Source of the DNA: Mobula hypostoma
Taxonomy: Eukaryota
Reading direction: 5' to 3'
NCBI RefSeq assembly: GCF_963921235.1
Contig: NC_086121.1
Coordinates: 44,144,001-44,208,000, forward strand
Length of the DNA stretch: 64,000 bases
The notes below the pieces were generated by a model. The model was not told the DNA's origin. It worked only from the letters and a program-made list of their open reading frames with translations, and made no database searches. This document shows, in pieces, positions 11,246 through 63,659 of the stretch. The position numbers and the translations under genes are program-made. How positions within the stretch are numbered: position 1 is the stretch's first letter; each line of letters starts with the position of its first letter.

Positions 11246-11503
11246 TCTGTCTTTTGTCTACTGATGTTAACTTATGTTTGACTTGTTATCATGTCCTCCT
11301 GCTGCTGTTGATGCTGAAAAACAACATTTATATCATGTGTTCATATGTCGATGACAATAAACTTAAACTAGAAAAGATTGTATATTGCATACTGTATTAC
11401 TGCAGATGTAAATTTAATACAAATGTATTTTTCATTCATTTTACAGGATGCTTATATTTAATAGTTCATAACTGAGAATTTTCTTTTCCAGAGTTTGAAG
11501 AAA

Positions 11504-11521
11504 ATGGCTAAAGTATTTTTG
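11504..11521 (+). CDS. First coding exon of the mucin-like gene (exon 11492-11521), MAKVFL, start of signal peptide
   Basis: Acceptor ttttcttttccag, ATG in strong Kozak context (AAAATGG), perfect donor TG|gtaagt, phase 0. Joins in frame to 12867. Confidence 0.7.
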
Positions 11522-12740: not shown

Positions 12741-12866
12741 CTTCAGATTATTGCAGAATAACAAGATGCGAGTTTCATTTGAGTTACTGAACCAACATTT
12801 TTCGTACTTATTTACAAGCCAAGCATGTTGTGATTTTGTTTCACACAAGTCTTTGTTTAATCCCAG

Positions 12867-12900
12867 GCATTTCTAACTGTTATCATACACTGCATCACCA
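12867..12900 (+). CDS. Second coding exon, AFLTVIIHCIT(+1 nt), hydrophobic core of signal peptide
   Basis: Acceptor ctttgtttaatcccag, donor A|gtaagt, phase 0 to 1. Gives MAKVFLAFLTVIIHCIT, a typical signal peptide, with a phase compatible with all downstream phase-1 exons. Confidence 0.7.
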
Positions 12901-29283: not shown

Positions 29284-29381
29284 GTGTAATGTTGCTGTTG
29301 GATTCTATTGTGAGAACGACCAGCAAAGTGATCAGAGCTGCCAAGATTACAGAATACGATTCACCTGCCCTCCATCATTTT
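29284..29381 (+). pseudogene. Orphan second-half CysD/WxxW exon (CNVAVGFYCENDQQSDQSCQDYRIRFTCPPSF); partner first-half exon missing
   Basis: 98-nt paralog of 51330-51427 with the same aacag|G acceptor and T|gtaagt donor. It starts in phase 2, but I find no phase-2 donor exon upstream. A CR1 fragment abuts the acceptor. Confidence 0.75.
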
Positions 29382-29722: not shown

Positions 29723-29749
29723 GTGCTGTTCTTTCTACTCCAGATACAT
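29723..29749 (+). CDS. 27-nt symmetric microexon, (S/C)AVLSTPDT
   Basis: Same acceptor context as the downstream microexons (ttaactgaattgttttgtttctgcttttag), donor gtgagtatatc, phase 1-1. Confidence 0.75.
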
Positions 29750-33603: not shown

Positions 33604-35142
33604 TGTACCTCTTCCTAGAGATGCTGCCTGGCCTGCTGCGTTCACCAGCAACTTTGATGTGTGTTGTTTGAATTTCCAGCATCTGCAGAATTCCTGTAGT
33701 TCAGTATTTATCGAATAGATGATGTGCTCAGAACCTTCCATCAACAACCTGGCAGAAATATCACTGAGAACAGTCATGTTGAGTTGATATGGAAGAAAAG
33801 CCTGACAGTCATAAGTTTTATCAACAGTCTCTGATGAACACTGGCTCAGCTGTTGTCCATTGGAACACCAACGAGTCAATCTTGATTTTAAAGGGAGTAA
33901 TGGGGTTGTGTACTCATCTACATTGTTGAGTCTGTAGAACAACTGGGCAATTAACAAAGGTATAAATTAACACATCCCCAAGAATTGGCCAATTGTTGGA
34001 CAACACAATGATAAATAAAATCTAGCCATTTTTGATGGATGTCTGGACATTTGTCATAGCCGAGACGTCCACCAATAACATTGTTGCTACGCTTGCATTA
34101 GGAGCTGAGCTGAAGCTGCGTGTTCTGCATTCATTTGTTCACCTTCTGACACTTCAAGCACACTCCTCTGATCACTATATTGAAGGAACACATGCAGTGA
34201 CATATTCACTACTCACTGGTGTGGGTGCGCTCATGCTTATGCAGCTCAACACCATTCAGAGTCCAATATATTTCTCTTGCGTCAGCATCCTGAAGCTACA
34301 AATAGTACAATCTGCAGTGCACATTGTAATAACTGATCGTGTTTAACCCCAGCTATGCCTGCCTTTCATTGGCATCGTGGAACAAGCCATGATCTGAATT
34401 TACACTAGTAACACTCCTCAACTCTTTCTCTGCTACGGTGAGGGTGTTGTTTCTGCACCTGTGTGGAAATTACGCAGCATCTCTGGAAAGAAAATCATGT
34501 TGACACCTGAACCTTTAACTTGGAGCTTTGAGTGTGAGTAGGTATTTCCAGTAGGATGGCAGCATGGTCAGATGCAGCAGCTACCTGTGTCCAATCGAAC
34601 TTCTCTTTGTTCATCCTTTATATCTTCTTTTTATGATCGCAGGTCACTGCAAAGTACTGCAGGACTGTCCCATCAGTGAGTTGTTTGATAACGATGGAGC
34701 TGGACTTGTTGCGTATCACTGTTTTGTTTCCACCTGGACTTGTTGCACCATAATGGTGCATGGTGCGAGTGGATGTTTTTATTGGGATTACAAGCCCCTG
34801 TTGAACTTTGGTAATGTGGTATACTGTGGAGCCGTGTTGCCTCAGCATTGGCGAGAACTAGTCCAAATGCATGGGCTTGCATTTTGCATCCACCCAGGAG
34901 AGGAACTGCCGAGGCAATGTTTGGGAAATTCCATGTGGAGTGCTAGAATCCATATTGGGTTGGAACCTGGTGACTCCTTTCAGTGCTGCTCTCCAGTGGA
35001 CCAGAACTTTTCTGAAATTGTAACATATCTGCTATTTGTTCCACAGCATGTGCTATGTGCTGTTGGTAACATATATTGCACCTTGGCCCTGGAAATATGC
35101 TGCTTCATTAGCCGTATTCATATATGGTTATACCATAATTAA

Positions 35143-38498: not shown

Positions 38499-38609
38499 TC
38501 CTCGAGGCTGGCGTTCCCGGAGCTCGGCTGCGGGGTCCTCGAGGCTGGCGTTCCCGGAGCTCGGCTGCGGGGTCCTCGAGGCTGGCGTTCCCGGAGCTCG
38601 GCTGCGGGA
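38499..38609. repeat. GC/CpG-rich 37-bp minisatellite, 3 copies
   Basis: (tcctcgaggctggcgttcccggagctcggctgcgggg)x3. Confidence 0.9.
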
Positions 38610-38759
38610 TCTTCATCTTGAAATGCGGAAGCTGATAACTCGGAGGCTGGAGCTGAGAGATAGACTGGGAACTGAACATCAACATAGGGCTGGAACTTGT
38701 CCTTCGAAAATCCGGGACTCATCGTTAACAGGACATGAACATGAGACAGGACAGTACAG

Positions 38760-39692
38760 TGTTACGTACCCCGTAACTGGGTTGCCAAACCAGCAGAAAT
38801 GGATCACTCAGTTGGAGTCTGGATTACTAGAACTAAGAAACACAGTCATCGAAAGGATAATAAATGCAACAGTTCAGCAATGATAAATACACATGTGCAC
38901 AGAATTAAGATAACAGCATCAATCAAGCTCTATCGTTGTCTAGGGGTAAATGACCAATTTCGAAGTGACACAAAAGTCCAGTTCGATTTAATAGTTCAGT
39001 TTGCAGTAATCGTTGCCATGGCGATGGACAACGTGGGGGGAGGGAGAGAGAGAATGGGAACGACTGATCATTCAGACACGGCTTCCACTCACAGACCGGC
39101 GATATTTCTCACAAGCAGCTTTCGGGCAGGTCCTTGGTGATGTCACCTGAGGTCACCGACTGTGACCCCTCCTCCAGATGCGGTCGATCCTCTGCAGTGA
39201 ACCCGGCACCCAAGCGAGGGTGGACACACACCGGGTTCCCGCTGATCGTACCTTTCCACCCTGTGCGTTTAAGGTCCGATACTTCCCACCGACTCGTGAG
39301 AGGCGCACCGCTTCCAGGGTCTCGTTACCTCGGGTGTCGTGTGTCTTGCCTTAGCGAATCTGTCCCTTTTTATCCCCCTGCTGGGGTATCGCCTGTCCAT
39401 CACTTCAAACAGTTCAAGGTTCAAAGGGGGAGCCGCTCCAGACATCTCTCTCGCCCGTCCCTTCATTACACATCTCCAGATCGCCTGTCCATCACTTCAA
39501 ACAGTTCAGGGTTCAAAGGGGGAGCCGCTCCAGACAGCTCTCTCTCCCGTCCCTTCATTACACATCTCCAGACGCTGCTCCATTGTTCCTTATCTCTCCT
39601 TCCCCTGAGGACAGGTGGCAGACCACTTGCTGATGCCACTGATGCTAACCCAGGCCAGCAAACATCTTAATTTTATGTGTATTCTCGTCACA
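38760..39692. mobile_element. Solo LTR (inner), probable 4-bp TSD ACAG/ATAG
   Basis: acag|TGTTACG...CGTCACA|atag; contains a tandem duplication of about 92 bp (39388-39571). Confidence 0.7.
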
Positions 39693-41784
39693 ATAGACAT
39701 AGAGCCGGGACTTATACTTCGACAAGCCGGGACTCAACCTCTCCACACCAAGGTGGGACAGGTCCACCTGTTGGGTAACAGCAGAACAGCCAGACTTACC
39801 CAACAGAGGCAAAGACAAGACAAGCATGTCCCCCCACAGGGCAACATCAAAACAGCCTGATTTACCCCAATGAGACAAGGACAAGACAAGACATGATCCC
39901 CCCACAGGGCAACAGCACAGCAGAACAGCCTGACTTACCCCACAGAGGCGAGAACAAGACAAGACAGATCCCCCTCAGGGCAATGGCAAAACAGCCTGAC
40001 TTACCCTCACAGAGGCAAGGACAAGAAGAGAAACACCAAAGAACAACAGACAGTTCTATCTCTGCTTCAGCATTGCTCCGAGTCACAGTTACAGCCAGCA
40101 ACCTCCGCTGGTTACGGAAACAGTCAGATCCCTACCTAGCTTGGAGTGGCTGACGGCCACTCAGCTGGCCCAGAAAACAGCCAAATCCATACCGCAAAAA
40201 CTACGCCAACAAGTGGCAACAAGGCTTCGTGAAGCAGTAGTCCTCCAACCAGGCCTAGAGATCACAAATGGTTTCACTAGACTTCCATCAGCAGGTTGCT
40301 CCAAGGGAGACTGACAAGGCAAACCAGCAGCCCACACTCAACGCTAGGCTACTTATATTCAAAGCCCCAAGATGGGAATCAGGTGCCTATGCTTAACTCA
40401 ATCAAACGAGGGACAGCTGGAAGACCAGGAGTCCTGAGTCCATGGACCGGATCATGAACCGGAATGCATACTTCACAGACCGGATCATGACAGCTTTAGC
40501 AGAGGATATCTCAGATGCAGGTCACTTTTTCTTGAACGAAGATTCAATAAAGGTCGATCATCTCCAAAACCACCGAACGATATCAGCTTTACTCGACTCT
40601 GCGAGTTCCTGTACTTTAGTAAGGTCTTCACTCTCCAATACTACTTACAACAGAAAGTAGAACTCCACTTTAAAATAAAACTACGTCATAAGACGAATAC
40701 ACAGCATAACAGAGTATCCGACGAATTAAATAACGAACTAAACTTAAAACTCAACTGGAAAAAACTAACTGCATCACCACAGGGGTCTCCCTTTTATACC
40801 GTGGTGAACATGTCATCACGTGACCTCACACTGGTGGGAAAATTACATTACCCCACTCAATTACATCATGGTCATAAGACAGTCACAAGATAAACATGAG
40901 GTATGTAATACTACACAATGTCTATGTCTTTCCATTTCACTACATTCATATGCCCATCTAAACATCTCTTAAACGTCCCTAATGTATCACCCTCTACCAC
41001 CAACCCAAGCAGTGCATTCCAGGCACCCACCACACTGTGTAAAACAAAACATGCCCCTCACATCTTCCTTCAAATTACTTCCTCTCACCTGAAGTGTGTA
41101 CCCTCTGTTTCTAATTACTTCAACACTGGGAAAAATATACTGTCTGTCTACTCTATGCCTTTCATAATCTTATAAACCTCTATCAGATCCTCACCTAGAC
41201 CGCTGCTCCGAAGAAAATAACACGTTTATCTAAATTCTCATTATAGCACGTGCCCTCTAATTCAGGCAGCATCCTTGTAAACATTATCTGCACCCTCTCC
41301 AAAGCCTCAAGATTCTTCTTCTAATAGGGCAACCAGAACTGTATGTAATACTCCAGATGTGGCCTAACTAGAGTTGTATAAAGCTGCAAAAACCATTGCT
41401 TTACATTTGACCTACCAAGGTGCAACAACTCACATTTTTGTCAGGTTAAACTGCATCTGCTATTTCTCTGCCCATATCTACAACTGATCTATATACTGCT
41501 GCATTCCTTGCCAGTCTTTTATATTATCCTCAACACCAATCTGCTTACTATCTGAAAACTTACTAATCCACCCATCTGGAGTATATTTTCATCCAAGCCA
41601 TTTGTATACATCACAAACAGAAGAGGTCAGCCCAGCACAGATCACTGCAGAACACCACAAATAACAGATCCAGCTAGAATAAATCCCTTCAAACATAATC
41701 TTCTGTCTTCGATGGGCAAGCTAGTTCTGTATCTAAGTGGCCAATTCAGTATTGATCCCATGCACCTTAATCTTCTTGATCAGC

Positions 41785-47137: not shown

Positions 47138-49307
47138 TTTCATAATCACGGATTCGGCAGTGCATCAGATTCGGCAATTGCACTGGTGAATATGCACATG
47201 TCAGCTAATTATTATTTCATTGTGATAGTATTGGACCCAGCGGAGAGAGAGCAGCTGACCTTGGCCATGAGATTCATTCGTCAGAGTGATCCGTCGAGAC
47301 AGCAATATTCCGTTGAATTCCTATGTATGAACTCATGTTTCTGTCTCCAGCGTGACAGAAGGATTTTGCCAAGTAATTGACCCAGGAAAGTTTGAACAGT
47401 GATGTTTTGACATTGGTGGCTTGAGGAGAGGGTGCCTTCTATTCTCAGTGCATGTCCTGACTCTACATTCCGAGAGTCCCAAGTCTATATACCGAGCTTC
47501 TCTAGTCTACATTACGTTTCTCCGGTATCTATTCCAAGCTTTTCAAGTCACAAGTACACAGGTTCCCAGCATTGTGGTCCCATGACTCAGATCTGCATTA
47601 CAAATGAGCGCTTCGAGCAAGCTTTTCAATTGATTCAACAAATCGTCATTCAAGTCAATAGTGTAAATTCTGGAAGAGCCCTACTCCAAAAGCTGAACCC
47701 TGGCTGGAGTGTACAAGTACACAAGTAAAGTAACCCAATCAAGAGTATTTTTAGCCCCTTGATGCAAGTCATGGTACAGACTGGGAACATTGAATTTTTA
47801 TGTAGCAACTTAAAACAGATTGATAGAGAACCACCTAGCTTAGCGATGAAAGAAAGCTGTTTATGCTGTCTTGATCTGTAAAATTGAGTATATCCTAATT
47901 GTGTCTGGAAAAAATAGTGAACAGTAAAACACTGTGAACAAGATTTGAAAAGGTTCCTTCTCTAGGTTTCAAGTTTCATGGTTTCAAGGTTTTCCAAAGA
48001 CTTTTCTCTATGTTCCCAGGGTTTTCATTTCCCAATCATTTCCAAGGCTTAATATGTTTAGTGTTTTTCAATGTCCGCCCCATCTCAGACTCCCAAGCCA
48101 CCCTCTGGCCCCGCCCGAGGTTTCTTGATTTCTGTCTGTGAGGGTTCCCAGGCCCCTCAGGATTCCCCGGTCACTCAGTCTGTTGGGGTACCCAGGCCCC
48201 TCAAGATTTCACCGGTCTCTCAGTCTGTTGGGGTTCCCAGGCCCCTCAAGATTCCCCAGTCTCTCAGTCTGAAGGGGATTCCCAGGCCCCTCAAGATTCC
48301 CCGGTCTCTCAGTCTGTTGGGGTTCCCATGCCTCTCTCTCGTTCCCCAGGTCTCTCGAGTTTTTAGATCTTCCTGGGACACCAGGTGCCAGCTGTAAAGA
48401 AGGGGGTTTTGTGGTGACTTCAGACCTGTGCAAGGCATCAGAGAGCTTTTGGGCTCTGGGGTTTTTAGATCACCTGAATTGGTTAATTGTTGCTTAAAAG
48501 TTATTAATGGTTTTAGTTTCTTGTGTTTTTCTCGAGCGACTCGCTCTTTGTAATGCAGTTTCTGGTGCTTTCTGTTTAAGTTTATTTTGATAAATTCAGA
48601 TTCTGTGTTCATTTTATTCTTGAAGCAGATGCTGTATTACCTCCAATCGGAGGGTCCTTGTTTTGAGAATGATTTGTCTCACGGTGTCACTTGGTTGAGT
48701 TACCTCTGTCTAAGCTCTTGTTTTTTCTTTCTCTACATGGAAGTCTTTGGCTCTGATATTGGCAGTGCACACCATGACACTTATCTACCAGCATCACTGA
48801 AGGACACCTTGGACAAGTCCCTCTTTCGGGACTTCCAATGGACATGGGTCTGTGGCGCCTCAGGGGCTGCGCCTAGAGATGAGGGCCCAGTCACAACCAC
48901 AGATTCAGCAGCGCATCAGATTCGGCAATTGCGCTCGTGAATATGCACACGTCAGCTAATCATGATTTCATTGTGATAGTATTTAACTCCATTCATTCCG
49001 TCGTAGTATTTGTCAAGACTTGGACATAGCTACGCTTTGTTATCTACATTTCGCTTTGCCCGAGAAATTGGACTGTTGAGTTAACTGACTCTGGAGACTA
49101 GCGATATTTGTTTTATTCTTAGTTGTTCTTTTCAGCTGCAGTGTAGGCTTTATTTTCCATTCGAGAATTTTTGTGAATGGCCCTGTTTTGGCCTAGCGTT
49201 TATTGTTTTCTTTTCCCTATAACACTGTTCGCATTAAAGTCTGTGAACTATCGACTTGCTTCAGTGTCTCTCACTCCGCACTTGGGCCATATCCGAACCA
49301 GATGACA
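47138..49307 (+). mobile_element. Degenerate LTR retroelement remnant (Gypsy-like)
   Basis: Direct repeat of about 70 bp (47163-47232 / 48914-48983), terminus GATGACA, imperfect TSD tatcc/tattc, internal tandem repeats of about 42 bp (48140-48330). Confidence 0.5.
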
Positions 49308-50630: not shown

Positions 50631-51043
50631 CTGCTCTTATTTAATACTCTCCCATGGGTTTCAGACTTAAGCTTAACGATAGCTATCTTAAAAATTAACT
50701 GTTTGTAGTCACTTTTCCCTGACTGCTCAGCCACTGAACATTCGGTCAAATGGCCAGGCTCATTCAACAGCAGATCCAGTACAGTACCTGTCTTGTTGGA
50801 AGGGGTCAGGACCTGCTCTGGGAGCTGAGTGGAAACAGTCCCATCAGTCACTATGGGACAGGAAGAGTAAAGGAAAGTGACCAGTACATCATTTATCATT
50901 GACACATTGCGGTCTCATCTGCAAGTTGATATGATACATTTTGATGCAGAATGTATGCTATGCTCGACAATGTCAGCAGATAAGTTCCACCAAAATGTGT
51001 TCACTATTAATGTAAAGTTTTAACGTTTTTTTCTCATCTTCAG

Positions 51044-51221
51044 CAAAAATATGCAAAACTGAATGGTTTAACATTGATGACCCATCAGGAGAGGGAGATT
51101 ATGAAGTTTTTAACCATCTGTATATTCAATTTCCCAACCGCATCTGCCTTTATCCAATCACCTGTGAGGTGGAGACAACATCAGGGGTTCCAGCCTCACA
51201 GACTGGAGAGAACATTGAACC
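51044..51221 (+). CDS. CysD/Mucin2_WxxW domain exon A (KICKTEWFNIDDPSGEGDYEVFNHLYIQFPNRICLYPITCEVETTSGVPASQTGENIE)
   Basis: Acceptor tttttttctcatcttcag, donor CC|gtacgt. The WF-x-x-D-D-P-S-G-x-G-D-Y-E and C-x-x-P motifs are characteristic of MUC2/MUC5/CILP CysD domains. Confidence 0.9.
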
Positions 51222-51329
51222 GTACGTAACAAAGCTGCTCATATTGTTTCACAAATATTACTTCATTCCAAAAAGCATTGAGAGCTTCTTCAATGACTCC
51301 ATTACATGTTCCTTCTCTGTGGTGAACAG

Positions 51330-51427
51330 GTGTAATGTTGCTCGTGGATTCTTCTGTAAGAACGACGATCAAAGTGATCAGATGTGCCAAGACTACAGAA
51401 TACGATTCACCTGCCCTCAATCACATT
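51330..51427 (+). CDS. CysD/Mucin2_WxxW domain exon B (CNVARGFFCKNDDQSDQMCQDYRIRFTCPQSH)
   Basis: aacag|G acceptor, T|gtaagt donor, phase 2 to 1. Motif G-x-x-C-x-N-x-x-Q...C-x-D-Y-x-I-R-F-x-C matches the CysD C-terminal half. Confidence 0.9.
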
Positions 51428-52443
51428 GTAAGTATGGGTAAATGCAAGTTATAGAGAGCTCAGAACATAAGTTTTAGAAAAAAATGTGGACCTCCAGGTG
51501 ATTTAATGTGGTCTGAGCTGATCAATCCCTCTGCCACCCTCTTACTATAGCTATCTATGCTCACTTCCATGTAACCATGTAAAGAGAATCTTTCAAGAGA
51601 AAAGACCTCCTTTATTACCTGCTCCAATGCCAAAGACAGCTGATCCATTTGGAGACCCAAACCGCCCACAACTTATTTCCCATGTGCATTACACATGCCA
51701 CTGACAGCTTTGTGGATACCATTTCACACCTATTGAAGGCAAAGGAGTGCAGATTGTACTTGTCACAGATAATGGCTGATGAGGCACATTGAAGTATTGA
51801 TGGAGAGATGATGTGTGAATAAAGGAGGAGATATTGTTAGAAGGAGATATAGCAAACATGGACAAGAATTTGGATGACAATGACAATTCTGATTCTGATA
51901 ATCCGCTGGTAATACGGAAAGCTGGAGCTCTATTGAGGACAGTGTGGACGACGGCATTTGCGAAGGGGTCAGGACCAGTTCTGGAGCTGAGGGGAAACAG
52001 ATCGTCACATCAGCCATCATGGAACACGAGGGGTAAAGTGAAGTGAGCAGCACATCAGTGATTCCGTAACACATTGGGATCTCATGTGCAAGTTGATGTC
52101 ATGCATTCTGATACAAAATATTGTTGCATGTCTACTGTGCTCAACTTAGACAGCAGATGAGTACCTCCAGAATGTGTATTCATTATTAATGTAATTCTTA
52201 TTTCCCATAATCAGTCAGTAGCTGCAAAACATGAATGGACCAATGGTGGTCATAGATTTCAGAACATAAGCTTTGGAAGAAGAAGGGTTGAACAGTCAGC
52301 TGATTTAATGTGTTCAGAACTGAATATTCACTCTCCCGCCTTCTTACCATAGCTATCATATCAGCTAGGTGATGATTGACGTATGTAAACTGTCACTACT
52401 TTTCAAATTTTAATTAACTGAATTGCTCTGTTTCTGCTTTTAG

Positions 52444-52467
52444 GTCCCACACCTGCAACAACTACAG
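52444..52467 (+). CDS. 24-nt microexon type A, (C)PTPATTT
   Basis: tttctgcttttag|GTCCCACACCTGCAACAACTACAG|gtgaga; phase 1-1. Confidence 0.85.
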
Positions 52468-53098
52468 GTGAGAATATTCTTCCTATTCTAATGGGATAAA
52501 CTTTGACTACTGTAAAAATGCTCCATGAATTCTCATCGTCTATGTTTTTAAGAGCTCATTGATTAAGGCTAGCTTGAAACACAGCAACAATCTTTCCATC
52601 TGAAACAATGAGGTACATTCAGAACCTCAACCAGTCCTTCATTCTCTGCGTCAGTCCGGCCAAGGAACTGCAGAAGTCCAGTGGACTCCCATGCTGTCCT
52701 ATTCCCGTATCTCAAGTTCCAAGTGGTTAACTTAGATTGCCTGCTGTTTAAAAGCAACATTGAACAACCTATGTGCTATCTTGCAAAATATGCTAACTGC
52801 AAACATATTTACAAAATACCCTGTATGAGCAATGGGATAGAATGAAGATGCTAACACATGTAAATTCCAAGGTAGTCATTTAGTCCAAAAATGTAGTCAC
52901 GCCAACCTTGAATACTCCTTATATTAGAATGATTTCAAAGCAAGAATGCACAACCTCCACTCCAGATTTGTGGTACCAGAGCTGACTGTTGAGCCTGTTG
53001 TGTGATGTGAGGACTCCTCCACAGGGTGATGGTTGATCTTTAAAATGTCAATACTTTTCAAATTATAATGTAATGAACTGTTTTCTTTCTGCTTTTAG

Positions 53099-53122
53099 GT
53101 GCAAGGTCCACTACAGCTCCCA
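53099..53122 (+). CDS. 24-nt microexon type B, (G)ARSTTAP
   Basis: ttctgcttttag|GTGCAAGGTCCACTACAGCTCCCA|gtgagt. Confidence 0.85.
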
Positions 53123-53807
53123 GTGAGTAAATCCTTGCCATTCTAAATATTGCAAACATTGACTCCAGTACAAAAGCTCCATCAAACAACATCGTGCCTG
53201 GTTTGAAGGCTGCTTGAGAGTAATAAACTTGCAACGTAGTTACAACAAAACGACAATATAGTCATGAGACATTTCCTTCTAAAGCAATTAGATGCATTGA
53301 AATCATCTCATTTCATTTGTCTTCATTATCTACATTAGTCTGGCAGATGAATCACAATTGTCTAGTGGCATCTCATGCTGTTGCCTTCACCTATCGCCAG
53401 GTCCAAGTGGTCAACTGAGATTTGACTGCTGCTTGATACGAACGTCACTGGACCTATGTGTTACCAGGTGCAACGTGCATTATGTAGACGTATCTACAGA
53501 AGTCCTTGAAAGAGGGACAGATAACAATTAATAGGTGAAAACATTGTAATACCAAAGAGGTCTGTTAGTTCAGGACACCAAGACTTAGCACTCTCAAAAC
53601 TGTATTCAGTAGGAATTGAACAGATGAAGTGCTCAACGTCATCCATCAACAAACTGTTAGAAATAACACTGAGAGTACACACATTGAGTCAACATGAAAA
53701 TAAAAGTTTTACGGTCTTAGATGTTATCAATTGTCTTTCATGAAGACCGGCTCATCTATTGTCCATTTTTAAAATGTCAATACTTTTCAAATTATAATGT
53801 AATGAAC

Positions 53808-54367
53808 TGCCCCATTCTGTTTTGCAGCTACTGACTGAAGATGCAAAGTAAGAATTACATTCAGACTTCTTGAGAGCTTGTTATGCTCCTTCTCTGCTTC
53901 ATTATCTGCAAGAGCGGATATAACAGACGTAAGCCTGAAAACTGACATGTCTTTAAAGGGAGTAATGGTGTTGTCTGCTCATCTCCATAGCTCATACTTC
54001 TAATAACGAAGACTGCAGCAACAACTGGACAATTATGAAGACTGGCTCAAAAAGATACAAATTTAATCTTCCCCAAACAAGTGTGACTAATGAGCAACAC
54101 GAAAAGCATCTAAGTGCAACATTCTTTAGCTAGACATATTTACAGAATTCCCTGTGAGGGTATGGGAAGTTTTTATATCATTGGAAGAAACAAATTCTTA
54201 ATTCAGTCAAAAAGCAAAAGCAAGTATACACAAGCACTTGGGAACTGAAGGCAGTTTGCGCTCTTGCAGATAATGAAGCAGAGAAGGAGCATAACAAGCT
54301 CTCAAGAAGTCTGAATGTAATTCTTACTTTGCATCTTCAGTCAGTAGCTGCAAAACAGAATGGGGCA
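53808..54367. repeat. 109-bp inverted repeat (53808-53916 / 54259-54367)
   Basis: tgccccattctgttttgcagctact...atctgcaagagcg is the reverse complement of cgctcttgcagat...aaacagaatggggca. Confidence 0.9.
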
Positions 54368-54978
54368 ATGCTGGTTATAGATTTAAGAACATAAGCCTGA
54401 AAAGAAAAGCGGGAGTCAGCTGGCCTAATGTCTTCAGAACCGATCAGTGACTCTCAGACCCTCTTACTATCGCTATCTATTCTCACTTCCATATTGTCCA
54501 AAAAACTAGTCAGTCCTGTCTTGAACACTCCTTATCATACCCTTCTTTTGGATTCAGAATGCCTGATACCCATACCAGTTTGTGGTGCCGTGGGGTCAGT
54601 TGAAGTCATTGTTGAATAGAAGACACTTCCACTCATTGCCCGGGGGATGATTGACAAACATAAACAGACTGTCAGCTGATTTAACGTCTTCAGAGTTGAT
54701 CATTCATTCTGCCACCATCTTGCTATAGTTATCAATGCTCATATCTATATTGTCCAAAATTCTTGTAACCGCTGTCTTGAATACTCCTTACTGTCCAAAT
54801 TCTTTGGGATTGAGAATGCCTTACACCTACTCCTGTTTTGTGGTGCCGTGGGTGACAATTGAACCCCTTGCGGAGAGAGAAGACTCTCCCACATTATGGC
54901 CGGGTGATGGTTGACATATATAAATAGATAATAACTTTCAAATTATAATTAACTGAACTTTTTTCTTTTTGCTTTAAG

Positions 54979-55002
54979 GTACTGCTTCTACCACAACTCC
55001 AG
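54979..55002 (+). CDS. 24-nt microexon type C, (S)TASTTTP
   Basis: tttttgctttaag|GTACTGCTTCTACCACAACTCCAG|gtgagt. Confidence 0.85.
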
Positions 55003-55626
55003 GTGAGTATATCCTTCCTATTCTAAAAGCGTAACTGTGACTGCAGTATAATGGCTCTGGCAAGCCTCATCGTTTGCATTTCAAGAGCTCCTTGATTATA
55101 ATTAATGTGAAACACAGCTACAGCTTTTTCTCCCGCAGCAATTGGATTCATTTAGATCATCAACCAGTCCGTTATTTTCTGGGTCGGTACAGAACAGGAA
55201 TTTCACGAGTCAAGTGGGCTCCGATGCCATTTCATTCCCCTTTCGCCAGTTCCAACTTTCTCTGACTGCTGTTTGAAAGCAATCTCTAGTGAACTATGTG
55301 CATCTGTGTACAACATGATTTATGCAGACATATTTACAAAACTCCCTGTGGGTGGGACAGGATAGAATGAGGTTGCAAATTCATTTATCTCCGAAGTGTT
55401 CATGTGGTCCAGGAATCCAGTCACCCCAACCTTAAGCAAGCCTTATTTGACCGTGCTTTTGCAGCAAGAATGTTTAACCTTCTCTCCCCGTTAGTGGGCC
55501 GAGGTAATTGCTGAACCTGCCGTGTGATGTGAGGACTCCACAGTTTAGCAGTATAATAGCTGACCTCTAATAAATGTCAATGGTTTTCAAATTATAATTA
55601 AATAAATTGTTTTTTTCTGCTTTCAG

Positions 55627-55650
55627 GTGCTAGTTCTACTGCGACTCCTA
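55627..55650 (+). CDS. 24-nt microexon type D, (G)ASSTATP
   Basis: tttctgctttcag|GTGCTAGTTCTACTGCGACTCCTA|gtgagt. Confidence 0.85.
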
Positions 55651-56823
55651 GTGAGTATATCTTTCAAATCCTAAGTATTGCAAATTATAACTGCCGTTCA
55701 AAAGCTCCATCGAATGGCATCGTGTCAAGCTTGAAGAATTTTTTGACCTTAATAATCTTGAAACAGAGAGTTGGTCTTTTTAGCAAACAATAATTGCTGC
55801 TTGTAATTGCCAGTCTTTGAGAACTTCCACGTTTCATTCAGAAGTAATATATTTAGGTCATTGCTCTGCTACGGGAAGTTAGGGAACTGTGTCTTGCTTC
55901 ATGATTGGAGTTTTCAGTGAACAAATTTTTTGTGGACAATGGTCGCAAATCGATCAGATTTAGCATTGTTTTGGTGACCGTCAATTTCAGGTGAAGACTG
56001 AAATCATGAGAAAGTGACACACAGGGGAAAAGCTAGGCACAGTAGCACAAGGAAACAGCTGAGGAGGGAAGATATGGAGAATCTGTTATTGGATTCACCC
56101 ACATCTGACATGTACGAGTCATTTGAATGCCAGCTGGTCAGAACTCAGAAACAAAATTTTCCTGTGAGGAACAAAGACAACTATGCAAAATTTTCATATC
56201 ATTAGGACACAAGAGTTCCAAATTCAGTAGAAAACAAAAAAAAGTATGCATTCTTTAATAGGACAATTGTGATACTGATGATAAGCTGATAATAATGAAA
56301 GCCGGAGGTTTATTGAGGAGAGGGTGTACAAAGCAGGTATGAAGGGGTCAGGATCAGTTCTGGAGTTGAAGGGATATTGTTCTTGTCAGTAGCCACCATT
56401 GGACAAGATGGGTTCGGGAAACTGAACAGCACATCAGAGATTGCCTAACACTTTGCGCTCTCATATGCAAGTTGATGTAATGCATTCTGATACCAAATAT
56501 ATTTCTGACTGTATATTCTGCTTGTATACACAGCAGATGAGTCCCATCAGGAAATGCATTTAATATTAATGTAATTCTGATTTCCCATAATCAGTCAGTA
56601 GCTGCAAAACATGAATGGGCCAATGGTGGTCATAGATTTCAGAACATAAGCCTTGGAAGAAGAAGGGTTGAACAGTCAGCTGATTTAATGTGTTCAGAAC
56701 CGAACATTCACTCTCCCGCCTTCTTACCATAGCTATCATATCAGCTGGGTGATGATTGATGTATCTAAACTGTCACCACTTTTCAAATTTTAATTAACTG
56801 AATTGCTCTGTTTCTGCTTTTAG

Positions 56824-56847
56824 GTCCCACACCTACAACAACTACAG
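56824..56847 (+). CDS. 24-nt microexon type A, (S)PTPTTTT
   Basis: tttctgcttttag|GTCCCACACCTACAACAACTACAG|gtgaga. Confidence 0.85.
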
Positions 56848-57488
56848 GTGAGAATATTCTTCCTATTCTAATGGGATAAACTTTGACTACTGTAAAAATG
56901 CTCCATGAGTCCTCATCATCTATGTTTTTAAGAGCTCATTGATTAAGGCTAGCTTGAAACACAGCAACAATATTTTCTTCTGAAACAATGAGATACATTC
57001 AGAACCTCAACCAGTCCTTCATTCTCTGCGTCAGTCCGGCCAAGGAACTGCAAAAGTCCAGTGGACTCCCATGCTGTCCTATTCCCGTATCTCAAGTTCC
57101 AAGTGGTTAACTTAGATTGTCTGCTGTTTAAAAGCAACATTGAGCAACCTATGTGCTATCTTGCAAAAAATATGCTAACTGCAAGCATACTTACAAAACA
57201 CCCCGTATGAGCAATGGGATAGAATGAACATTCTAACACGATTAAATTCTAAAGTAATCACTTAGTCCAAAAAAGTTGTCACACAAACCTTGAATAATCC
57301 TTATATTAGAATGATTTCAAAGAAAGAATGCACAACCTCCACTCCAGATTTGTGGTACCAGAGTTGACTATTAAGCCTGTTGTGTGATTTGAGGACTCCT
57401 CCACAGCCTGGCAGGGTAATGGTTGATCTTTAAACTGTCAATATTTTTCAAATTTTAATGTAATGAACTATTTTCTTTCTGCTTTTAG

Positions 57489-57512
57489 GTGCAAGTTCCA
57501 CTACAGCTCCCA
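57489..57512 (+). CDS. 24-nt microexon type B, (G)ASSTTAP
   Basis: ttctgcttttag|GTGCAAGTTCCACTACAGCTCCCA|gtgagt. Confidence 0.85.
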
Positions 57513-59203
57513 GTGAGTATATCCTTCCCATTCTAAATATTGCAAACTTTGACTACAGTACAAAAGTTCCATCAAGCAACATCGTGTCTAGTTTGAAGGG
57601 CTGCTTCATAAATTTGCAACACAATTAGAATGCAACAGCAGCATTTTCACGGGACATTTCCTTCTGAAGCAATTAGATGCATTGAAATCATTTCATTTAA
57701 TTTGTCCTTCATTATCTACATTAGTCTGGCAGAGGAATCACAATTGTCTAGTGGCATCTCATGCTGTTGCCTTCAGCTATCGCCAGGTCCAAGTGGTCAA
57801 CTGAGATTTGACTGCTGCTTGATACGAAGATCACTGGACCTATGTGCTACCAGGTGCAACGTGCGTTATGTAGACGTATCTACAGAAGTCCCTGAGAGAG
57901 GGACAGATAACAATTAATATGTGAAGACAGTATAATTCCAAAGAGGTCTGTTAGTTCAGGGCACCAAGACTTACCACTCTCAAAATTGTATTCGGAAGGA
58001 ATTGGACAGATGAACTGCTCAATGTCATCCATCAACAAACTGTTATAAATAGCACTGAGAGGAGACATGTTGAGTAAACATGAAAATAAAAGTTTTACGG
58101 ATTTAGATGTTATCAATGGTCTTTCATGAACACCGGCTCATCTATTGTCCACTGGTCTCAAACAAAACTGACTCGACTTTAAAGAGAGTAATGGTGTTGT
58201 CTGCTCATCTCCATTGCTCATACTTCTAATAACGAAGACTGCAGCAACAACTGGACAATTATGAAGACTGGATCAAAAAGATGCAAATTTAATCTTCCCC
58301 AAACAAGGGTGACTAAAGAGCAACACAATAAGCATCCAAGTGCAACATTCTTTAGCTAGAGATTTCTACAGAGATCACTGTGAGAGTATGGGAAGTTTTT
58401 ATATCGTTGGAAGAAACAAGTTCTTAATTCAGTCAAAATGCAAAAGCATGTCTACACAAGCACTTACCAACTTAAGGCGGTTTGCGCTCTTGCAGGAAAT
58501 GAAGCAGCGAAGGAGCATAATAAGCTATCAAGAGGTCTGAAGTCATTCTTACTTGGCATCTTCAGTCAGCAGCTGCAAATCAGAATGGGGCAATGCTGGT
58601 TATAGATTTCAGAACATAGCCTGAAAAGAAAAGCTGGATGTCAGCTGCTTTAATATCTTCAGAACCGATCAGTGACTCTCAGACCCTCTTACTATAGCTA
58701 TCTATTCTCACTTCCATATTGTCCAAAAAACTAGTCAGTACTGTCTTGAACACTCCTTATCATACCCTTCTTTTGGATTCAGAATGCCTGATACCCACAC
58801 CGGTTTTGTGGTGCTCTGGTGTCAGTTGAAGTCCTTGTCAAATAGAAGACTCTTCCATTTATTGGCCGGGGGATGATTGATAAATATAAATAGACTGTCA
58901 GCTGATTTAATGTTTTCAGAGCTGATCACACAGTCTGACACCTTCTTCCTTTAGGTATTAATTCTCACTTCTGAACTGTCCAAAATTCTTGTAACCGCTG
59001 TCTTGAACACTCCTTACTGTCCAATTCTTTGGGATTGAGAATGCCTTACACCTACTCCTGTTTTGTGGTGGCGCGGGTGACAATTGAAGCATTTGTGGAG
59101 AGAGAAGACTCTCCCACATTATGGTCGGTGATGATTGACATATATAAACAGATAATAATTTCCAAATTATAATTAACTGAACTTTTTTTCTTTTTGCTTT
59201 AAG

Positions 59204-59227
59204 GTACTGCGTCTACTACAACTCCAG
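59204..59227 (+). CDS. 24-nt microexon type C, (S)TASTTTP
   Basis: tttttgctttaag|GTACTGCGTCTACTACAACTCCAG|gtgagt; differs from 54979 only at synonymous positions. Confidence 0.85.
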
Positions 59228-59851
59228 GTGAGTATATCCTTCCTATTCTAAAAGCGTAACTGTGACTGCAGTAAAAAGGCTCTGTCAAGCCCCATTGTTT
59301 GTATTTCAAGATCTCCTTGATGACAATTAATGTGAAACACAGCTCCATCTTTTCCTCCTGCAATAATTGGATGCATTTAGATCATCAACCAGTCCGTAAT
59401 TTTCTGGGTCAGTACAGAGCAGGAATTTCATGAGTCAAGTGGGCTCCGATGCCATTTAATCCCCCTTTCGCCAGTTCCAAGTGGTTAACTTTCACTGACT
59501 GCTGTTTGAAAGCAATGTCTAGTGAACTATGTGCATCCTTGTCGAACAGTCTTTATGCAGACATATTTACAAAATTCCCTGTGGGTGGGACGGGATAGAA
59601 TGAGGTTACAAATTCATTTATCTCCGAAGTGTTCATGTGGTCCAGGAATCCAGTCACCCCAACCTTAAGCAAGCCTTATTTGACCGTGCTTTTGCAGCAA
59701 GAATGTTTAAACTTCTCTCCCGATTAGTGACCCGAGGCAAATGCTGAACCTGCCATGTGATGTGAGGACTACACAATGTAAAAGCTGACCTTTAATAACT
59801 GTCAATGGTTTTCAAATTATAGCTAAATAAATTGTTTGTTTCTGCTTTCAG

Positions 59852-59875
59852 GTGCTGGTTCTACTGCAACTCCTA
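59852..59875 (+). CDS. 24-nt microexon type D, (G)AGSTATP
   Basis: tttctgctttcag|GTGCTGGTTCTACTGCAACTCCTA|gtgagt. Confidence 0.85.
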
Positions 59876-61095
59876 GTGAGTATATCTTTCAAATCTTAAA
59901 CATTGCAAATTTTAACTGCAGTTCAAAGCTCTATCGGACGATATTGTGTCTAGCTTGAAGGGTTTTTTGACTTTAATAATCTTGAAGCAGAGAGTTGGTC
60001 TTCTTAGCAAACAATAATTGCTGCATATATTTGCCAGTCTTTGAGAACTCCCAGGTTTCATTCAGAAGTGATATATTTAGGTCATTGCTGTACTAGGGGA
60101 AGTTAGGGAACTGTGTCTTGCCTTGTGATTGGATTTTTCAATGAACAAATTTTTTGTGGACAGTGGTTGAAAATCGATCAGATTTAGCATTGTTTTGGTA
60201 ACGATCAGTTTCAGGTGAAGACTGAAATCATGAGAGAGTGAAACAAAGGGGAAAAGCTAGGCACAGTAGCACAAGGAAACAGCTGAGGAGGGAAGATATG
60301 GAGAATCTGTTGCTGGGTTCATCCATATCCGACATGTACGAGTCACTTGAAGCCAAGCTGGTCAGAACTCAGGAACAAAATTTTCCTGTGAGGAACAAAG
60401 AAAACTATGCAAAATTTTCATATCATTGGGACACAGGAGTTCCAAATTCAGTAGAAAGCAAAAAAAATGTATGCGTTCTTTTAGAGGACAATTGTGAAAC
60501 TGATGATAAGCCGATAATAATGAAAGCTGGAGGTTGATTGAGGAGAGGGTGTACGAAGCACATGTGAAGGGGTCAGGATCAGTTCTGGAGTTGAGGGAAT
60601 ATTGTTCTTGTCAGTAGCCAGCATTGGACAAGATGGGTTCGGGAAACTGAACAGCACATCAGAGATTGCCTAACACATTGCGCTCTCATATGCAAGTTGA
60701 TGTAATGCATTCTGATGCCAATCTATTTCTGCATGTATATTCTGCCTATATAGACGGCAGATGAGTACAATCAGAAAATGCACTTAATATTAACGTAATT
60801 CCTGTTATCCTCAATACTGAATGGGGCAATGGTGATTATTGATTTCAGAACATGTCTGAAGAGAAAAGTTGTACTGTCAGCTGATTTAATGTCTTCAGCG
60901 TTGATCAATCACTCTGCCACTCTCTTACTACAGAATGCCTTACACACACTCCTGTTTTGTGGTGCCGTGGGTGACAATTGAAGCCCTTGTGGAGAGAGAA
61001 GATGCCCACATTATGGCCGGGTGATGATTGACATATATAAACAGATAATAATTTTCAAATTATAATTAACTGAACATTTTTCTTTTTGCTTTAAG

Positions 61096-61119
61096 GTACT
61101 GCTTCTACTACAACTCCAG
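61096..61119 (+). CDS. 24-nt microexon type C, (S)TASTTTP
   Basis: tttttgctttaag|GTACTGCTTCTACTACAACTCCAG|gtgagt. Confidence 0.85.
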
Positions 61120-61743
61120 GTGAGTATATCATTCCTAATCTAAAAGCATAACTGTGACTGCAGTAAAAAGGCTCTGTCAAGCCTTATCATTTATATTTCA
61201 AGCGCTCCTTAATTTTCAACAATGTGAAACACAGCTACAACTTTTCCTCCTGCAACAATTGGATGCATTAAGATCATCAACCAGTCTGTTATTTTCTGGG
61301 TCGGTACAGAACAGGAATTTCACCAGTCAAGTGGGTTCCGATGCCATTTCATTCCCCTTTCGCCAGTTCCAAGTGGTTAACTTTCACTGACTGCTGTTTG
61401 AAAGCAATGTCTAGTGAACTATGTGCATCCTTGTCGAACAGTCTTTATGCAGACATATTTACAAAATTCCCTGTGGGTGGGACGGGATAGAATGAGGTTG
61501 CAAATTCATTTATCTCCGAAGTGTTCATGTGGTCCAGGAATCCAGTCACCCCAACCTTAAGCAAGCCTTATTTGACCGTGCTTTTGCAGCAAGAATGTTT
61601 AAACTTCTCTCCCGATTAGTGACCCGAGGCAAATGCTGAACCTGCCATGTGATGTGAGGACTACACAATGTAAAAGCTGACCTTTAATAACTGTCAATGG
61701 TTTTCAAATTATAGCTAAATAAATTGTTTGTTTCTGCTTTCAG

Positions 61744-61767
61744 GTGCTGGTTCTACTGCAACTCCTA
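61744..61767 (+). CDS. 24-nt microexon type D, (G)AGSTATP
   Basis: tttctgctttcag|GTGCTGGTTCTACTGCAACTCCTA|gtgagt. Confidence 0.85.
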
Positions 61768-62987
61768 GTGAGTATATCTTTCAAATCTTAAACATTGCAA
61801 ATTTTAACTGCAGTTCAAAGCTCTATCGGACGATATTGTGTCTAGCTTGAAGGGTTTTTTGACTTTAATAATCTTGAAGCAGAGAGTTGGTCTTCTTAGC
61901 AAACAATAATTGCTGCATATATTTGCCAGTCTTTGAGAACTCCCAGGTTTCATTCAGAAGTGATATATTTAGGTCATTGCTGTACTAGGGGAAGTTAGGG
62001 AACTGTGTCTTGCCTTGTGATTGGATTTTTCAATGAACAAATTTTTTGTGGACAGTGGTTGAAAATCGATCAGATTTAGCATTGTTTTGGTAACGATCAG
62101 TTTCAGGTGAAGACTGAAATCATGAGAGAGTGAAACAAAGGGGAAAAGCTAGGCACAGTAGCACAAGGAAACAGCTGAGGAGGGAAGATATGGAGAATCT
62201 GTTGCTGGGTTCATCCATATCCGACATGTACGAGTCACTTGAAGCCAAGCTGGTCAGAACTCAGGAACAAAATTTTCCTGTGAGGAACAAAGAAAACTAT
62301 GCAAAATTTTCATATCATTGGGACACAGGAGTTCCAAATTCAGTAGAAAGCAAAAAAAATGTATGCGTTCTTTTAGAGGACAATTGTGAAACTGATGATA
62401 AGCCGATAATAATGAAAGCTGGAGGTTGATTGAGGAGAGGGTGTACGAAGCACATGTGAAGGGGTCAGGATCAGTTCTGGAGTTGAGGGAATATTGTTCT
62501 TGTCAGTAGCCAGCATTGGACAAGATGGGTTCGGGAAACTGAACAGCACATCAGAGATTGCCTAACACATTGCGCTCTCATATGCAAGTTGATGTAATGC
62601 ATTCTGATGCCAATCTATTTCTGCATGTATATTCTGCCTATATAGACGGCAGATGAGTACAATCAGAAAATGCACTTAATATTAACGTAATTCCTGTTAT
62701 CCTCAATACTGAATGGGGCAATGGTGATTATTGATTTCAGAACATGTCTGAAGAGAAAAGTTGTACTGTCAGCTGATTTAATGTCTTCAGCGTTGATCAA
62801 TCACTCTGCCACTCTCTTACTACAGAATGCCTTACACACACTCCTGTTTTGTGGTGCCGTGGGTGACAATTGAAGCCCTTGTGGAGAGAGAAGATGCCCA
62901 CATTATGGCCGGGTGATGATTGACATATATAAACAGATAATAATTTTCAAATTATAATTAACTGAACATTTTTCTTTTTGCTTTAAG

Positions 62988-63011
62988 GTACTGCTTCTAC
63001 TACAACTCCAG
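62988..63011 (+). CDS. 24-nt microexon type C, (S)TASTTTP
   Basis: Copy of 61096-61119, exactly 1892 bp downstream. Confidence 0.85.
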
Positions 63012-63635
63012 GTGAGTATATCATTCCTAATCTAAAAGCATAACTGTGACTGCAGTAAAAAGGCTCTGTCAAGCCTTATCATTTATATTTCAAGCGCTCC
63101 TTAATTTTCAACAATGTGAAACACAGCTACAACTTTTCCTCCTGCAACAATTGGATGCATTAAGATCATCAACCAGTCTGTTATTTTCTGGGTCGGTACA
63201 GAACAGGAATTTCACCAGTCAAGTGGGTTCCGATGCCATTTCATTCCCCTTTCGCCAGTTCCAAGTGGTTAACTTTCACTGACTGCTGTTTGAAAGCAAT
63301 GTCTAGTGAACTATGTGCATCCTTGTCGAACAGTCTTTATGCAGACATATTTACAAAATTCCCTGTGGGTGGGACGGGATAGAATGAGGTTGCAAATTCA
63401 TTTATCTCCGAAGTGTTCATGTGGTCCAGGAATCCAGTCACCCCAACCTTAAGCAAGCCTTATTTGACCGTGCTTTTGCAGCAAGAATGTTTAAACTTCT
63501 CTCCCGATTAGTGACCCGAGGCAAATGCTGAACCTGCCATGTGATGTGAGGACTACACAATGTAAAAGCTGACCTTTAATAACTGTCAATGGTTTTCAAA
63601 TTATAGCTAAATAAATTGTTTGTTTCTGCTTTCAG

Positions 63636-63659
63636 GTGCTGGTTCTACTGCAACTCCTA
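63636..63659 (+). CDS. 24-nt microexon type D, (G)AGSTATP
   Basis: Copy of 61744-61767, exactly 1892 bp downstream. Confidence 0.85.

What the first reader, a model, noticed from the sequence alone, without database searches (positions are those of the whole stretch)
52195..58600. Microexon repeat units descend from CysD modules: fossil CKTEW exon starts remain in the introns
Seen: the intron upstream of CysD exon A (50800-51043) is homologous to 51960-52215 and 56340-56595. At the equivalent position these read cag-TC AGT AGC TGC AAA ACA (T)GAA TGG, matching exon A's cag-CA AAA ATA TGC AAA ACT GAA TGG (C-K-T-E-W). They then run directly into sequence homologous to the intron after exon B (cagaacataag...gatttaatg). 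Copies at 54341-54373 and 58566-58598 keep the catcttcag acceptor and a 33-nt in-frame SSCK(T/S)EWGNA before a weak gttata donor. Copies at 52215 and 56595 carry a +1 insertion giving TGA. Inference: an ancestral [CysD + linker microexon]n gene lost its CysD exons by deletion, and the linker exons amplified into a new mucin domain.
Basis: partly seen in the sequence, partly recalled or inferred. Interest (0 to 1): 0.72.

Follow-up and report, generated by a model that had tools for sequence, protein, structure and literature searches.

The report
Deleted CysD domain fossils in introns
In a devil-ray gene for a secreted cysteine-domain (CysD) protein, one CysD domain was cut out by a small deletion. 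The leftover unit was then copied many times, building a mucin-like stretch from 24-base exons, and each copy still carries the same scar of the lost domain in an intron.

Summary

**What is there.** The window carries Mobula hypostoma LOC134337692. Its parts are a signal peptide, a 27-nt exon, one intact two-exon CysD (51044-51221, 51330-51427), and then at least 12 PTS microexons of 24 nt.

**The relics.** Six intronic relics (52215, 54341, 56595, 58566, 60816, 62708) join the first 23 nt of CysD exon A to position +11 of the intron after exon B. The junction is the same ATGG microhomology in all six, equal to a 371-nt deletion. An identical junction in all six means one deletion followed by tandem amplification (units 89% and 98.5% identical), not repeated losses.

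**Relatives.** Related rays keep the predicted ancestral form:
- The thorny skate has [CysD + 21-nt microexon]n.
- A ray-derived contig (L001) has an intact CysD exactly where the window has relic F1.
- A Mobula paralogue encodes [CysD + 3 microexons] x7.

**RNA.** RNA contigs splice the microexons in order and skip every relic they cross (F1-F3).

**Family.** The gene belongs to the signal-peptide plus CysD-only family (zebrafish si:dkey-205h13.2, the neuromast cupula mucin). It is not a VWD-type gel-forming mucin.

The same stretch was also noted elsewhere in this scan (microexon array, array hierarchy, orphan exon).

The parts
11492..11521 (+). Exon with the start codon (ATG 11504), encoding MAKVFL
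   Evidence: tblastn of P0022/P0002; sequence read
12867..12900 (+). Signal-peptide exon 2 (AFLTVIIHCIT), ends in phase 1 with ..CCA
   Evidence: The RNA contig loose end CCA|GTGCTG.. joins it to 29723
29284..29381 (+). Orphan CysD exon B of a first CysD whose exon A is missing. Not used in the RNA contigs
   Evidence: tblastn 79% to exon B; sequence. In the RNA the exon upstream of 29723 ends CCA, not TTTT
29723..29749 (+). 27-nt linker microexon (AVLSTPDT), spliced to CysD exon A across a 21-kb intron
   Evidence: loose ends at 51044 in four RNA runs; P0022
50799..51043 (+). Upstream-intron block U of the intact CysD, ending in the acceptor catcttcag
   Evidence: blastn to 51962, 56341, 60566, 62458; A1
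51044..51221 (+). CysD exon A (phase 1)
   Evidence: Pfam PF13330 positions 2-57, 34.8 bits; splice joint 51221>51330 in four runs
51330..51427 (+). CysD exon B (ends in phase 1)
   Evidence: Pfam PF13330 positions 59-88, 33.5 bits; joint 51427>52444
51428..51570 (+). Downstream-intron block D of the intact CysD. ATGG at 51434-51437 is the distal deletion microhomology
51962..52357 (+). Relic F1: U 51962-52214, exon A remnant 52215-52238 (+1 base, TGA 52232-52234), D 52239-52357
   Evidence: L001:14-660 aligns up to 52238 and then continues as an intact exon
52444..52467 (+). Microexon A (PTPATTT)
53099..53122 (+). Microexon B (ARSTTAP)
53808..53916 (-). 100% identical inverted copy of 54259-54367 (includes a reversed relic), next to a 41-nt 100% copy of 53040-53080
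54314..54492 (+). Relic F2: last ~27 nt of U with acceptor, open 33-nt remnant 54341-54373 (SSCKTEWGNA), D block to 54492
   Evidence: Skipped by joint 53122>54979
54979..55002 (+). Microexon C (TASTTTP)
55627..55650 (+). Microexon D (ASSTATP)
56341..56737 (+). Relic F3: U, exon A remnant 56595-56618 (+1 base, TGA), D
   Evidence: Skipped by joint 55650>56824
56824..56847 (+). Microexon A' (PTPTTTT)
57489..57512 (+). Microexon B' (ASSTTAP)
   Evidence: P0022
58542..58717 (+). Relic F4: acceptor, open 33-nt remnant 58566-58598 (SSCKSEWGNA), D
59204..59227 (+). Microexon C'
59852..59875 (+). Microexon D'
60566..60933 (+). Relic F5: U, truncated remnant ACTGAATGG 60816-60824 (acceptor and first 14 nt lost), D
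61096..61119 (+). Microexon C''
61744..61767 (+). Microexon D''
62458..62825 (+). Relic F6, identical to F5 (remnant 62708-62716)
62988..63011 (+). Microexon C'''
63636..63659 (+). Microexon D'''

Best explanation
The window holds the 5' part of a Mobula hypostoma gene of the 'signal peptide + tandem CysD' family. The ancestral gene alternated two-exon CysD modules with short phase 1-1 linker microexons.

In one module a 371-nt genomic deletion between two ATGG microhomologies removed almost the whole domain. The proximal ATGG lies 20-23 nt into exon A; the distal one lies at +7 to +10 of the intron after exon B. What remained was the acceptor, the first 23 nt of exon A, and the downstream intron.

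This CysD-less unit (relic plus two microexons) was then duplicated in tandem several times. First came AB/CD half-units (about 70-78% identical), then ABCD blocks (89%), then CD units of 1893 bp (98.5%). The result is a PTS-rich, mucin-like region with one octapeptide per 24-nt exon.

The relics are non-functional intron sequence. The RNA contigs skip every relic they cross (F1-F3), two relics have a stop codon, two lost their acceptor, and none has a usable donor.

Shown here: the homology, the shared junction, the splicing pattern, and the alternating architecture in relatives. Inferred: the order of events, the microhomology-mediated mechanism, and O-glycosylated mucin function.
For: - Flank homology and register of the exon A start.
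- One junction in six copies, against 0.01 expected by chance.
- A virtual deletion product of the intact unit aligns end to end with the relics at 70-76%.
- Contig L001 is collinear with window 51593-52238 and continues as an intact CysD. Its exon A start (TCAGTACCTGCAAAACCGAATGG) matches the relics at 21-22 of 23 positions. It is followed by a 24-nt microexon homologous to microexon B.
- Skate locus L002 has signal-peptide exons homologous to the window's, then three [CysD + 21-nt microexon] units. Its microexon flanks match the window's at up to 90%.
- Mobula paralogue P0002 encodes [CysD-PTPATTT-NASTTSP-AGSTATP] x7.
- Nested unit identities.
- RNA contigs from four runs join 29749>51044, 51221>51330, 51427>52444, 52467>53099, 53122>54979, 55002>55627 and 55650>56824 with GT..AG ends, so relics F1-F3 are skipped.
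- CysD identity by Pfam PF13330.
- Family names and function.
Against: - No genomic DNA could be fetched for the closest relatives (Mobula paralogue, Hemitrygon, Hypanus). The species in which the deletion arose is therefore unknown.
- The source species of L001 is not known.
- C-type relics (F2, F4) show clear upstream-intron homology for only about 30 nt. Further upstream the alignment score is about 3 sd above shuffles.
- The intact CysD is followed directly by relic F1 with no microexon between them. This needs an extra rearrangement that I did not resolve.
- Logan contigs drop rare variants, so low-level inclusion of the 33-nt remnants is not excluded.
Confidence: 0.9

Rival explanations
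1. The similarity comes from a dispersed repeat (a transposable element) that happens to lie next to the CysD exons and in the microexon introns.
For: A neighbouring spacer block (51570-51952) also has copies at 26289-26483 and 37241-37560.
Against: All copies lie inside this one gene, on the + strand and in unit order. The blocks flank intact CysD exons in the same order in a skate and in contig L001. The similarity includes 23 nt of coding exon in register with the acceptor. No hits exist elsewhere in the 64-kb window.
Confidence: 0.02
2. Each unit lost its own CysD independently. Recurrent deletion at the same ATGG microhomology, or later gene conversion, made the junctions look alike.
For: The ATGG microhomology is present in the intact copy, so recurrence is mechanistically possible. 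Tandem arrays do undergo conversion.
Against: Six copies share the junction and the sequence following it, which differs from both intact introns in the same way (GGCAATGsTG against GTAAATGCAA and GAAAATGGAA). Unit identities form a simple nested duplication hierarchy.
Confidence: 0.05
3. The open 33-nt remnants at 54341-54373 and 58566-58598 are still used as rare cassette exons, inserting SSCK(T/S)EWGNA with a free cysteine into the mucin domain.
For: They keep a good acceptor, are in frame and phase 1-1, and are open in both copies.
Against: Joint 53122>54979 skips the first remnant in three RNA runs. The donor is GTTATA. An open 10-codon frame is expected by chance about 60% of the time. 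The four other relics are dead: two have TGA and two lost the acceptor.
Confidence: 0.04
4. Reverse direction: the short form is ancestral, and the CysD exons were inserted into one copy.
For: None beyond the formal symmetry of an indel.
Against: CysD modules with the same two-exon structure and the same flanks are present in skates, stingrays and sharks. The domain is ancient in bilaterians (PMC4948705). The remnant is a truncated coding start that encodes no domain.
Confidence: 0.01

Closest known systems
Zebrafish 'Mucin-5AC' (si:dkey-205h13.2), the neuromast cupula protein, and its fish homologues (PMC11765562)
   Same: It has a signal peptide followed directly by CysD (WxxW) modules, with no VWD domains. 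The shark and ray relatives of the window's CysD carry this name. The skate homologue has many CysD copies (27 in the paper; L002 here).
   Different: The described members are chains of CysD without PTS. Here all but one CysD in the window is gone, replaced by a PTS array of 24-nt microexons that carry CysD relics.
Gel-forming mucins MUC2 / MUC5AC / MUC5B
   Same: CysD domains (PF13330) are interspersed with PTS sequence.
   Different: In those mucins the PTS lies in one large exon, flanked by VWD-C8-TIL and CK domains. Here the signal peptide is spliced straight to linker and CysD, and the PTS is split into 24-nt exons.
Chicken Muc13 PTS domain encoded by multiple exons (PMC1552070)
   Same: One PTS repeat per exon, and the array arose by exon duplication.
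   Different: Muc13 is a transmembrane SEA mucin. No domain relics were reported there. The exons here are only 24 nt.
Mucin origin by gain of exonic PTS repeats in non-mucin genes (PMC9417175)
   Same: A non-mucin secreted protein acquires a PTS repeat domain by repeat amplification.
   Different: Those cases are repeats within an exon in mammals. Here whole exon-intron units amplified, after a domain deletion that left a datable scar.

Membership tests
CysD / Mucin2_WxxW domain (PF13330) | Match to the Pfam profile above the gathering score | tested here: met
   Exon A scores 34.8 bits (profile positions 2-57) and exon B 33.5 bits (59-88), against a cut-off of 22.4
Signal peptide + CysD-only family (si:dkey-205h13.2 / fish cupula 'Mucin-5AC') | The closest relatives are named members of the family | tested here: met
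   P0001 cluster (Stegostoma, Rhincodon, Chiloscyllium) and Hypanus P0157 are named si:dkey-205h13.2
Signal peptide + CysD-only family (si:dkey-205h13.2 / fish cupula 'Mucin-5AC') | N-terminal signal peptide joined directly to CysD, with no VWD/C8/TIL | tested here: met
   RNA contigs join 12900>29723>51044. P0022, P0002 and P0009 start MAKV(F/L)L... and then CysD. No signal-peptide predictor was run.
Signal peptide + CysD-only family (si:dkey-205h13.2 / fish cupula 'Mucin-5AC') | Orthologous locus in another batoid | tested here: met
   Skate L002 9920-10082 and 10847-11157 match the window's signal-peptide exon regions 11426-11574 and 12808-13120. CysD units follow.
Signal peptide + CysD-only family (si:dkey-205h13.2 / fish cupula 'Mucin-5AC') | Expression in lateral-line neuromast support cells | not testable with these tools
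   The RNA runs that hold the transcript are coded and give no tissue
Gel-forming mucin (MUC2/MUC5 type) | N-terminal VWD-C8-TIL assemblies | tested here: not met
   The transcript runs from signal peptide to linker to CysD. No such exons were found between 11492 and 51044 by homology.
Deletion relic of an exon (pseudo-exon) | Collinear homology of both flanks with an intact unit, with a coding remnant in register | tested here: met
Deletion relic of an exon (pseudo-exon) | Not included in mature RNA | tested here: met
   Joints 51427>52444, 53122>54979 and 55650>56824 skip F1, F2 and F3. Contigs only, so rare isoforms are not excluded.
Mucin (PTS) domain | Long Pro/Thr/Ser-rich repeat that is densely O-glycosylated | tested here: inconclusive
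   Twelve octapeptides rich in T/S/P/A are encoded and spliced. Glycosylation cannot be tested here.

The most novel reading that the evidence does not exclude
The batoid cupula-type CysD gene records, stage by stage, the birth of a true mucin domain:
- CysD-only chains in sharks.
- CysD plus one microexon linker in skates and stingrays.
- In devil rays, a microhomology-mediated deletion of a CysD, followed by runaway amplification of the 24-nt linker exons. Every unit still carries the deletion scar, and a sister gene on the same chromosome amplified the intact [CysD + 3 microexons] unit instead.

If so, this would be a naturally replicated and datable example of exon-level 'mucinisation'. 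It would also be a vertebrate gene that constitutively splices dozens of consecutive 24-nt exons.
Probability: 0.55. Interest if true: 0.65.

Novelty: new variant of a known kind. Interest (0 to 1): 0.55.

Why it matters
How mucin (PTS) domains arise is an active question. Known cases are repeats that expand inside one exon.

Here the route is different and leaves a readable record. A structured domain was deleted, its scar was copied along with the linker microexons, and intermediate architectures survive in related rays and in a paralogue. That lets the order of events be tested by comparing genomes.

The case also shows a practical problem. NCBI gene models break this gene into at least three fragments and give one of them an out-of-frame tail, because the predictor cannot follow arrays of 24-nt exons. 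Mucin-like genes of this build are probably under-annotated in vertebrate genomes.

Tried and rejected
Unit-by-unit comparison with the closest relatives was therefore not possible.
- A search for exon A of the first CysD upstream of 29284 found nothing.
- Clear homology between the C-type relics and the upstream-intron block beyond about 30 nt was not established. The alignment score was 64.5 against shuffles of 38 +/- 8, maximum 60.
- Pfam on the orphan exon B gave nothing because I gave coordinates one base out of frame. The tblastn match stands.
Searches for microexon-built mucins returned no paper that uses the word microexon.
- A scan-wide search for other CysD notes in this genome found only notes on this window.
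- The dispersed-repeat, reverse-direction and live-cassette-exon readings were considered and rejected, as set out under the rival explanations.
Full report
**The sequence**

The region is a vertebrate gene on the + strand.
- Exon A (51044-51221) and exon B (51330-51427) together encode a 92-residue CysD domain.
- Each half matches Pfam Mucin2_WxxW above the gathering score.
- Downstream lie twelve 24-nt exons. All start with GT, all are phase 1-1, and each encodes a Thr/Ser/Pro/Ala octapeptide.

**Checking the observation**

A self-comparison shows two homologous blocks.
- The 245 nt upstream of exon A (block U, 50799-51043) recur at 51962, 56341, 60566 and 62458. The best match is 74% identity, E 1e-36.
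- The first 140 nt of the intron after exon B (block D, 51428-51570) recur after each of these, and also at 54357 and 58582.

Alignments A1 and A2 put the acceptor and the exon A start in register. They then show every copy passing from ..GAATGG straight into the D block.
- The intact copies read GTAAGTATGG|GTAAATGCAAGTTATAGA.. there.
- The relics read ..GAATGG|GGCAATGCTGGTTATAGA...

The breakpoint therefore lies in an ATGG present both in exon A (51063-51066) and in the intron (51434-51437). That is a 371-nt deletion in the coordinates of the intact copy.

Further checks:
- The junction motif occurs six times on the + strand, against 0.01 expected. The exon core motif occurs four times, against 0.08 expected.
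- A virtual deletion product built from the intact unit aligns end to end with the four long relics at 70-76% identity.
- Two further relics (60816, 62708) have lost the acceptor and the first 14 nt.

**Not a dispersed repeat**

- Outside the array, the U and D blocks hit only the other CysD remnant at 29.3 kb.
- A spacer block upstream of U (51570-51952) and pieces of the microexon introns do have weak copies at 25498-26483, 30018-30187, 33694-33923 and 36437-37560.
- These copies all lie inside this gene's long introns, on the + strand and in unit order. They look like the skeleton of further decayed units, not like a mobile element.

**What the gene is**

An exhaustive profile search with exon A found two Mobula hypostoma proteins on one 47-Mb chromosome.
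- P0022 (XP_062888954.1) matches the window's exons exactly, including the order of seven microexons. The window is therefore this locus, or a near-identical genome.
- Its product starts with a signal peptide. The exons are 11492-11521 and 12867-12900, then the 27-nt exon 29723-29749, then the CysD.
- There are no VWD domains.
- More distant relatives in sharks and rays are named si:dkey-205h13.2. In zebrafish this is the neuromast cupula protein made only of a signal peptide and CysD modules, with a 27-CysD homologue in a skate (PMC11765562).

**RNA**

Four runs of the same species hold about two thirds of the sampled words of the 411-nt query around the CysD, which equals the exonic share.

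Their contigs, laid on 51000-56999, show GT..AG joints:
- 51221>51330
- 51427>52444
- 52467>53099
- 53122>54979
- 55002>55627
- 55650>56824

The loose ends before 51044 read ..CCA + the 27-nt exon. From this:
- The microexons are spliced in order.
- Relics F1, F2 and F3 are skipped.
- The orphan exon B at 29284-29381, which ends ..TTTT, is not used.
- Some contigs carry microexon variants absent from the window, so the array continues beyond 64000.
- These are contigs, so rare isoforms cannot be excluded.

- Thorny skate locus L002 has signal-peptide exon regions homologous to the window's. It then has three units of [two-exon CysD + 21-nt microexon GVTEPP] about 2.3 kb apart. Its microexon flanks are up to 90% identical to the window's, and a copy of block U lies upstream of a CysD.
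- The Leucoraja and Hypanus proteins alternate CysD and a 7-8 residue linker.
- The 1682-nt contig L001 is the most telling.
  - Its bases 14-660 align with window 51593-52238, that is spacer, U and relic F1 up to GAATGG.
  - It then continues as an intact exon A, intron, exon B and D block, followed by a 24-nt microexon homologous to microexon B.
  - Its exon A start differs from the relics at one or two of 23 positions. The lost module was therefore of this 'STCKTEW' type, not a copy of the surviving 'KICKTEW' CysD.
- The Mobula paralogue P0002 (XP_062888950.1) encodes the signal peptide, the linker, and then [CysD-PTPATTT-NASTTSP-AGSTATP] seven times. The same genome therefore amplified the intact unit in one gene and the deleted unit in the other.

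**History inferred**

Unit identities are nested:
- Single microexon units: about 66%.
- AB against CD half-units: 70-78%.
- ABCD blocks 51882-56261 against 56262-60486: 89%.
- 1893-bp CD units from 59038 on: 98.5%.

Because all relics share one junction, a single deletion preceded all these duplications. The junction is not at a splice site, which rules out an RNA-mediated origin. The 4-nt microhomology fits end joining or replication slippage, but that step is inference.

Hemitrygon P0009 already has three consecutive microexons after its second CysD. This hints that CysD-less runs predate the devil ray lineage, but no DNA was available to test it.

**Extent of the gene**

The look-ups place a 232-residue model without Pfam hits 458 nt after P0022. 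P0077 (LOC134337694) lies about 2 kb after that model. P0077 encodes seven more D/C microexons and then another CysD starting INICKTEW. Most likely these are fragments of one gene of the form CysD - long microexon PTS - CysD. This is inference from gene order and content.

**Comparison with what is known**

- CysD domains between PTS stretches are typical of MUC2 and MUC5 (PMC4948705), but this gene fails the VWD criterion for that family.
- A PTS domain with one repeat per exon is known from chicken Muc13 (PMC1552070).
- A mucin domain gained by repeat expansion in a non-mucin protein is described for mammals (PMC9417175).
- I found no report of intronic CysD relics, or of a 24-nt microexon PTS array in this family.
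- I file it as a new variant of a known kind.

**Verdict**

The refinements are a single deletion, a different parent module, and a different gene family. The relics are evolutionary scars without evident present function. Their value is as a dated record of how a mucin-like domain was assembled.

Noticed in passing
window 29284-29381: The orphan CysD exon B keeps an open frame, an acceptor and a GTAAGT donor. The RNA contigs nevertheless join 12900 directly to 29723, so it is skipped. Its exon A is missing. A spacer-block remnant lies at 25498-26483, upstream of repeat-like sequence.
   Followed up: partly
window 53769-53916: A composite insertion found only in the first ABCD block. It consists of a 41-nt 100% copy of 53040-53080, followed by a 109-nt 100% inverted copy of 54259-54367 that includes a relic. 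It is either a very recent templated insertion or an assembly artefact.
   Followed up: partly
window 54415-54928 and 58639-59152: An internal tandem duplication of about 257 nt of the intron between relic and microexon C (74-76% identity). It is present in both ABCD blocks, so it is older than their duplication.
   Followed up: partly
window 30018-30187, 33694-33923, 36437-36876, 37241-37560: The 21-kb intron between 29749 and 51044 contains weak, collinear, + strand copies of microexon-unit introns and of the spacer block. This suggests at least one more unit decayed there.
   Followed up: partly
window 59850-63659 and NCBI models XP_062888954.1, LOC134337694: The public gene models appear to split this gene into three. 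One model ends with microexons read out of frame (YCFYYNSR..) and with intron read-through (GEYILPILKA).
   Followed up: partly
window 51000-56999 (RNA contigs): Contigs carry microexon variants that are not in the window, such as one with ACTGCTTCTACAATGACTAC. The array therefore extends beyond base 64000 with diverged units.
   Followed up: no
window 38469-40026 and 48134-48336: GC-rich tandem repeats (periods 37, 92, 66 and 45/89 nt) lie inside the long intron. They are probably parts of inserted elements.
   Followed up: no
L002 17000-22147: The skate CysD array is interrupted after its third unit by retroelement-like ORFs on the opposite strand. The annotated 2649-residue product continues beyond the locus.
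   Followed up: no
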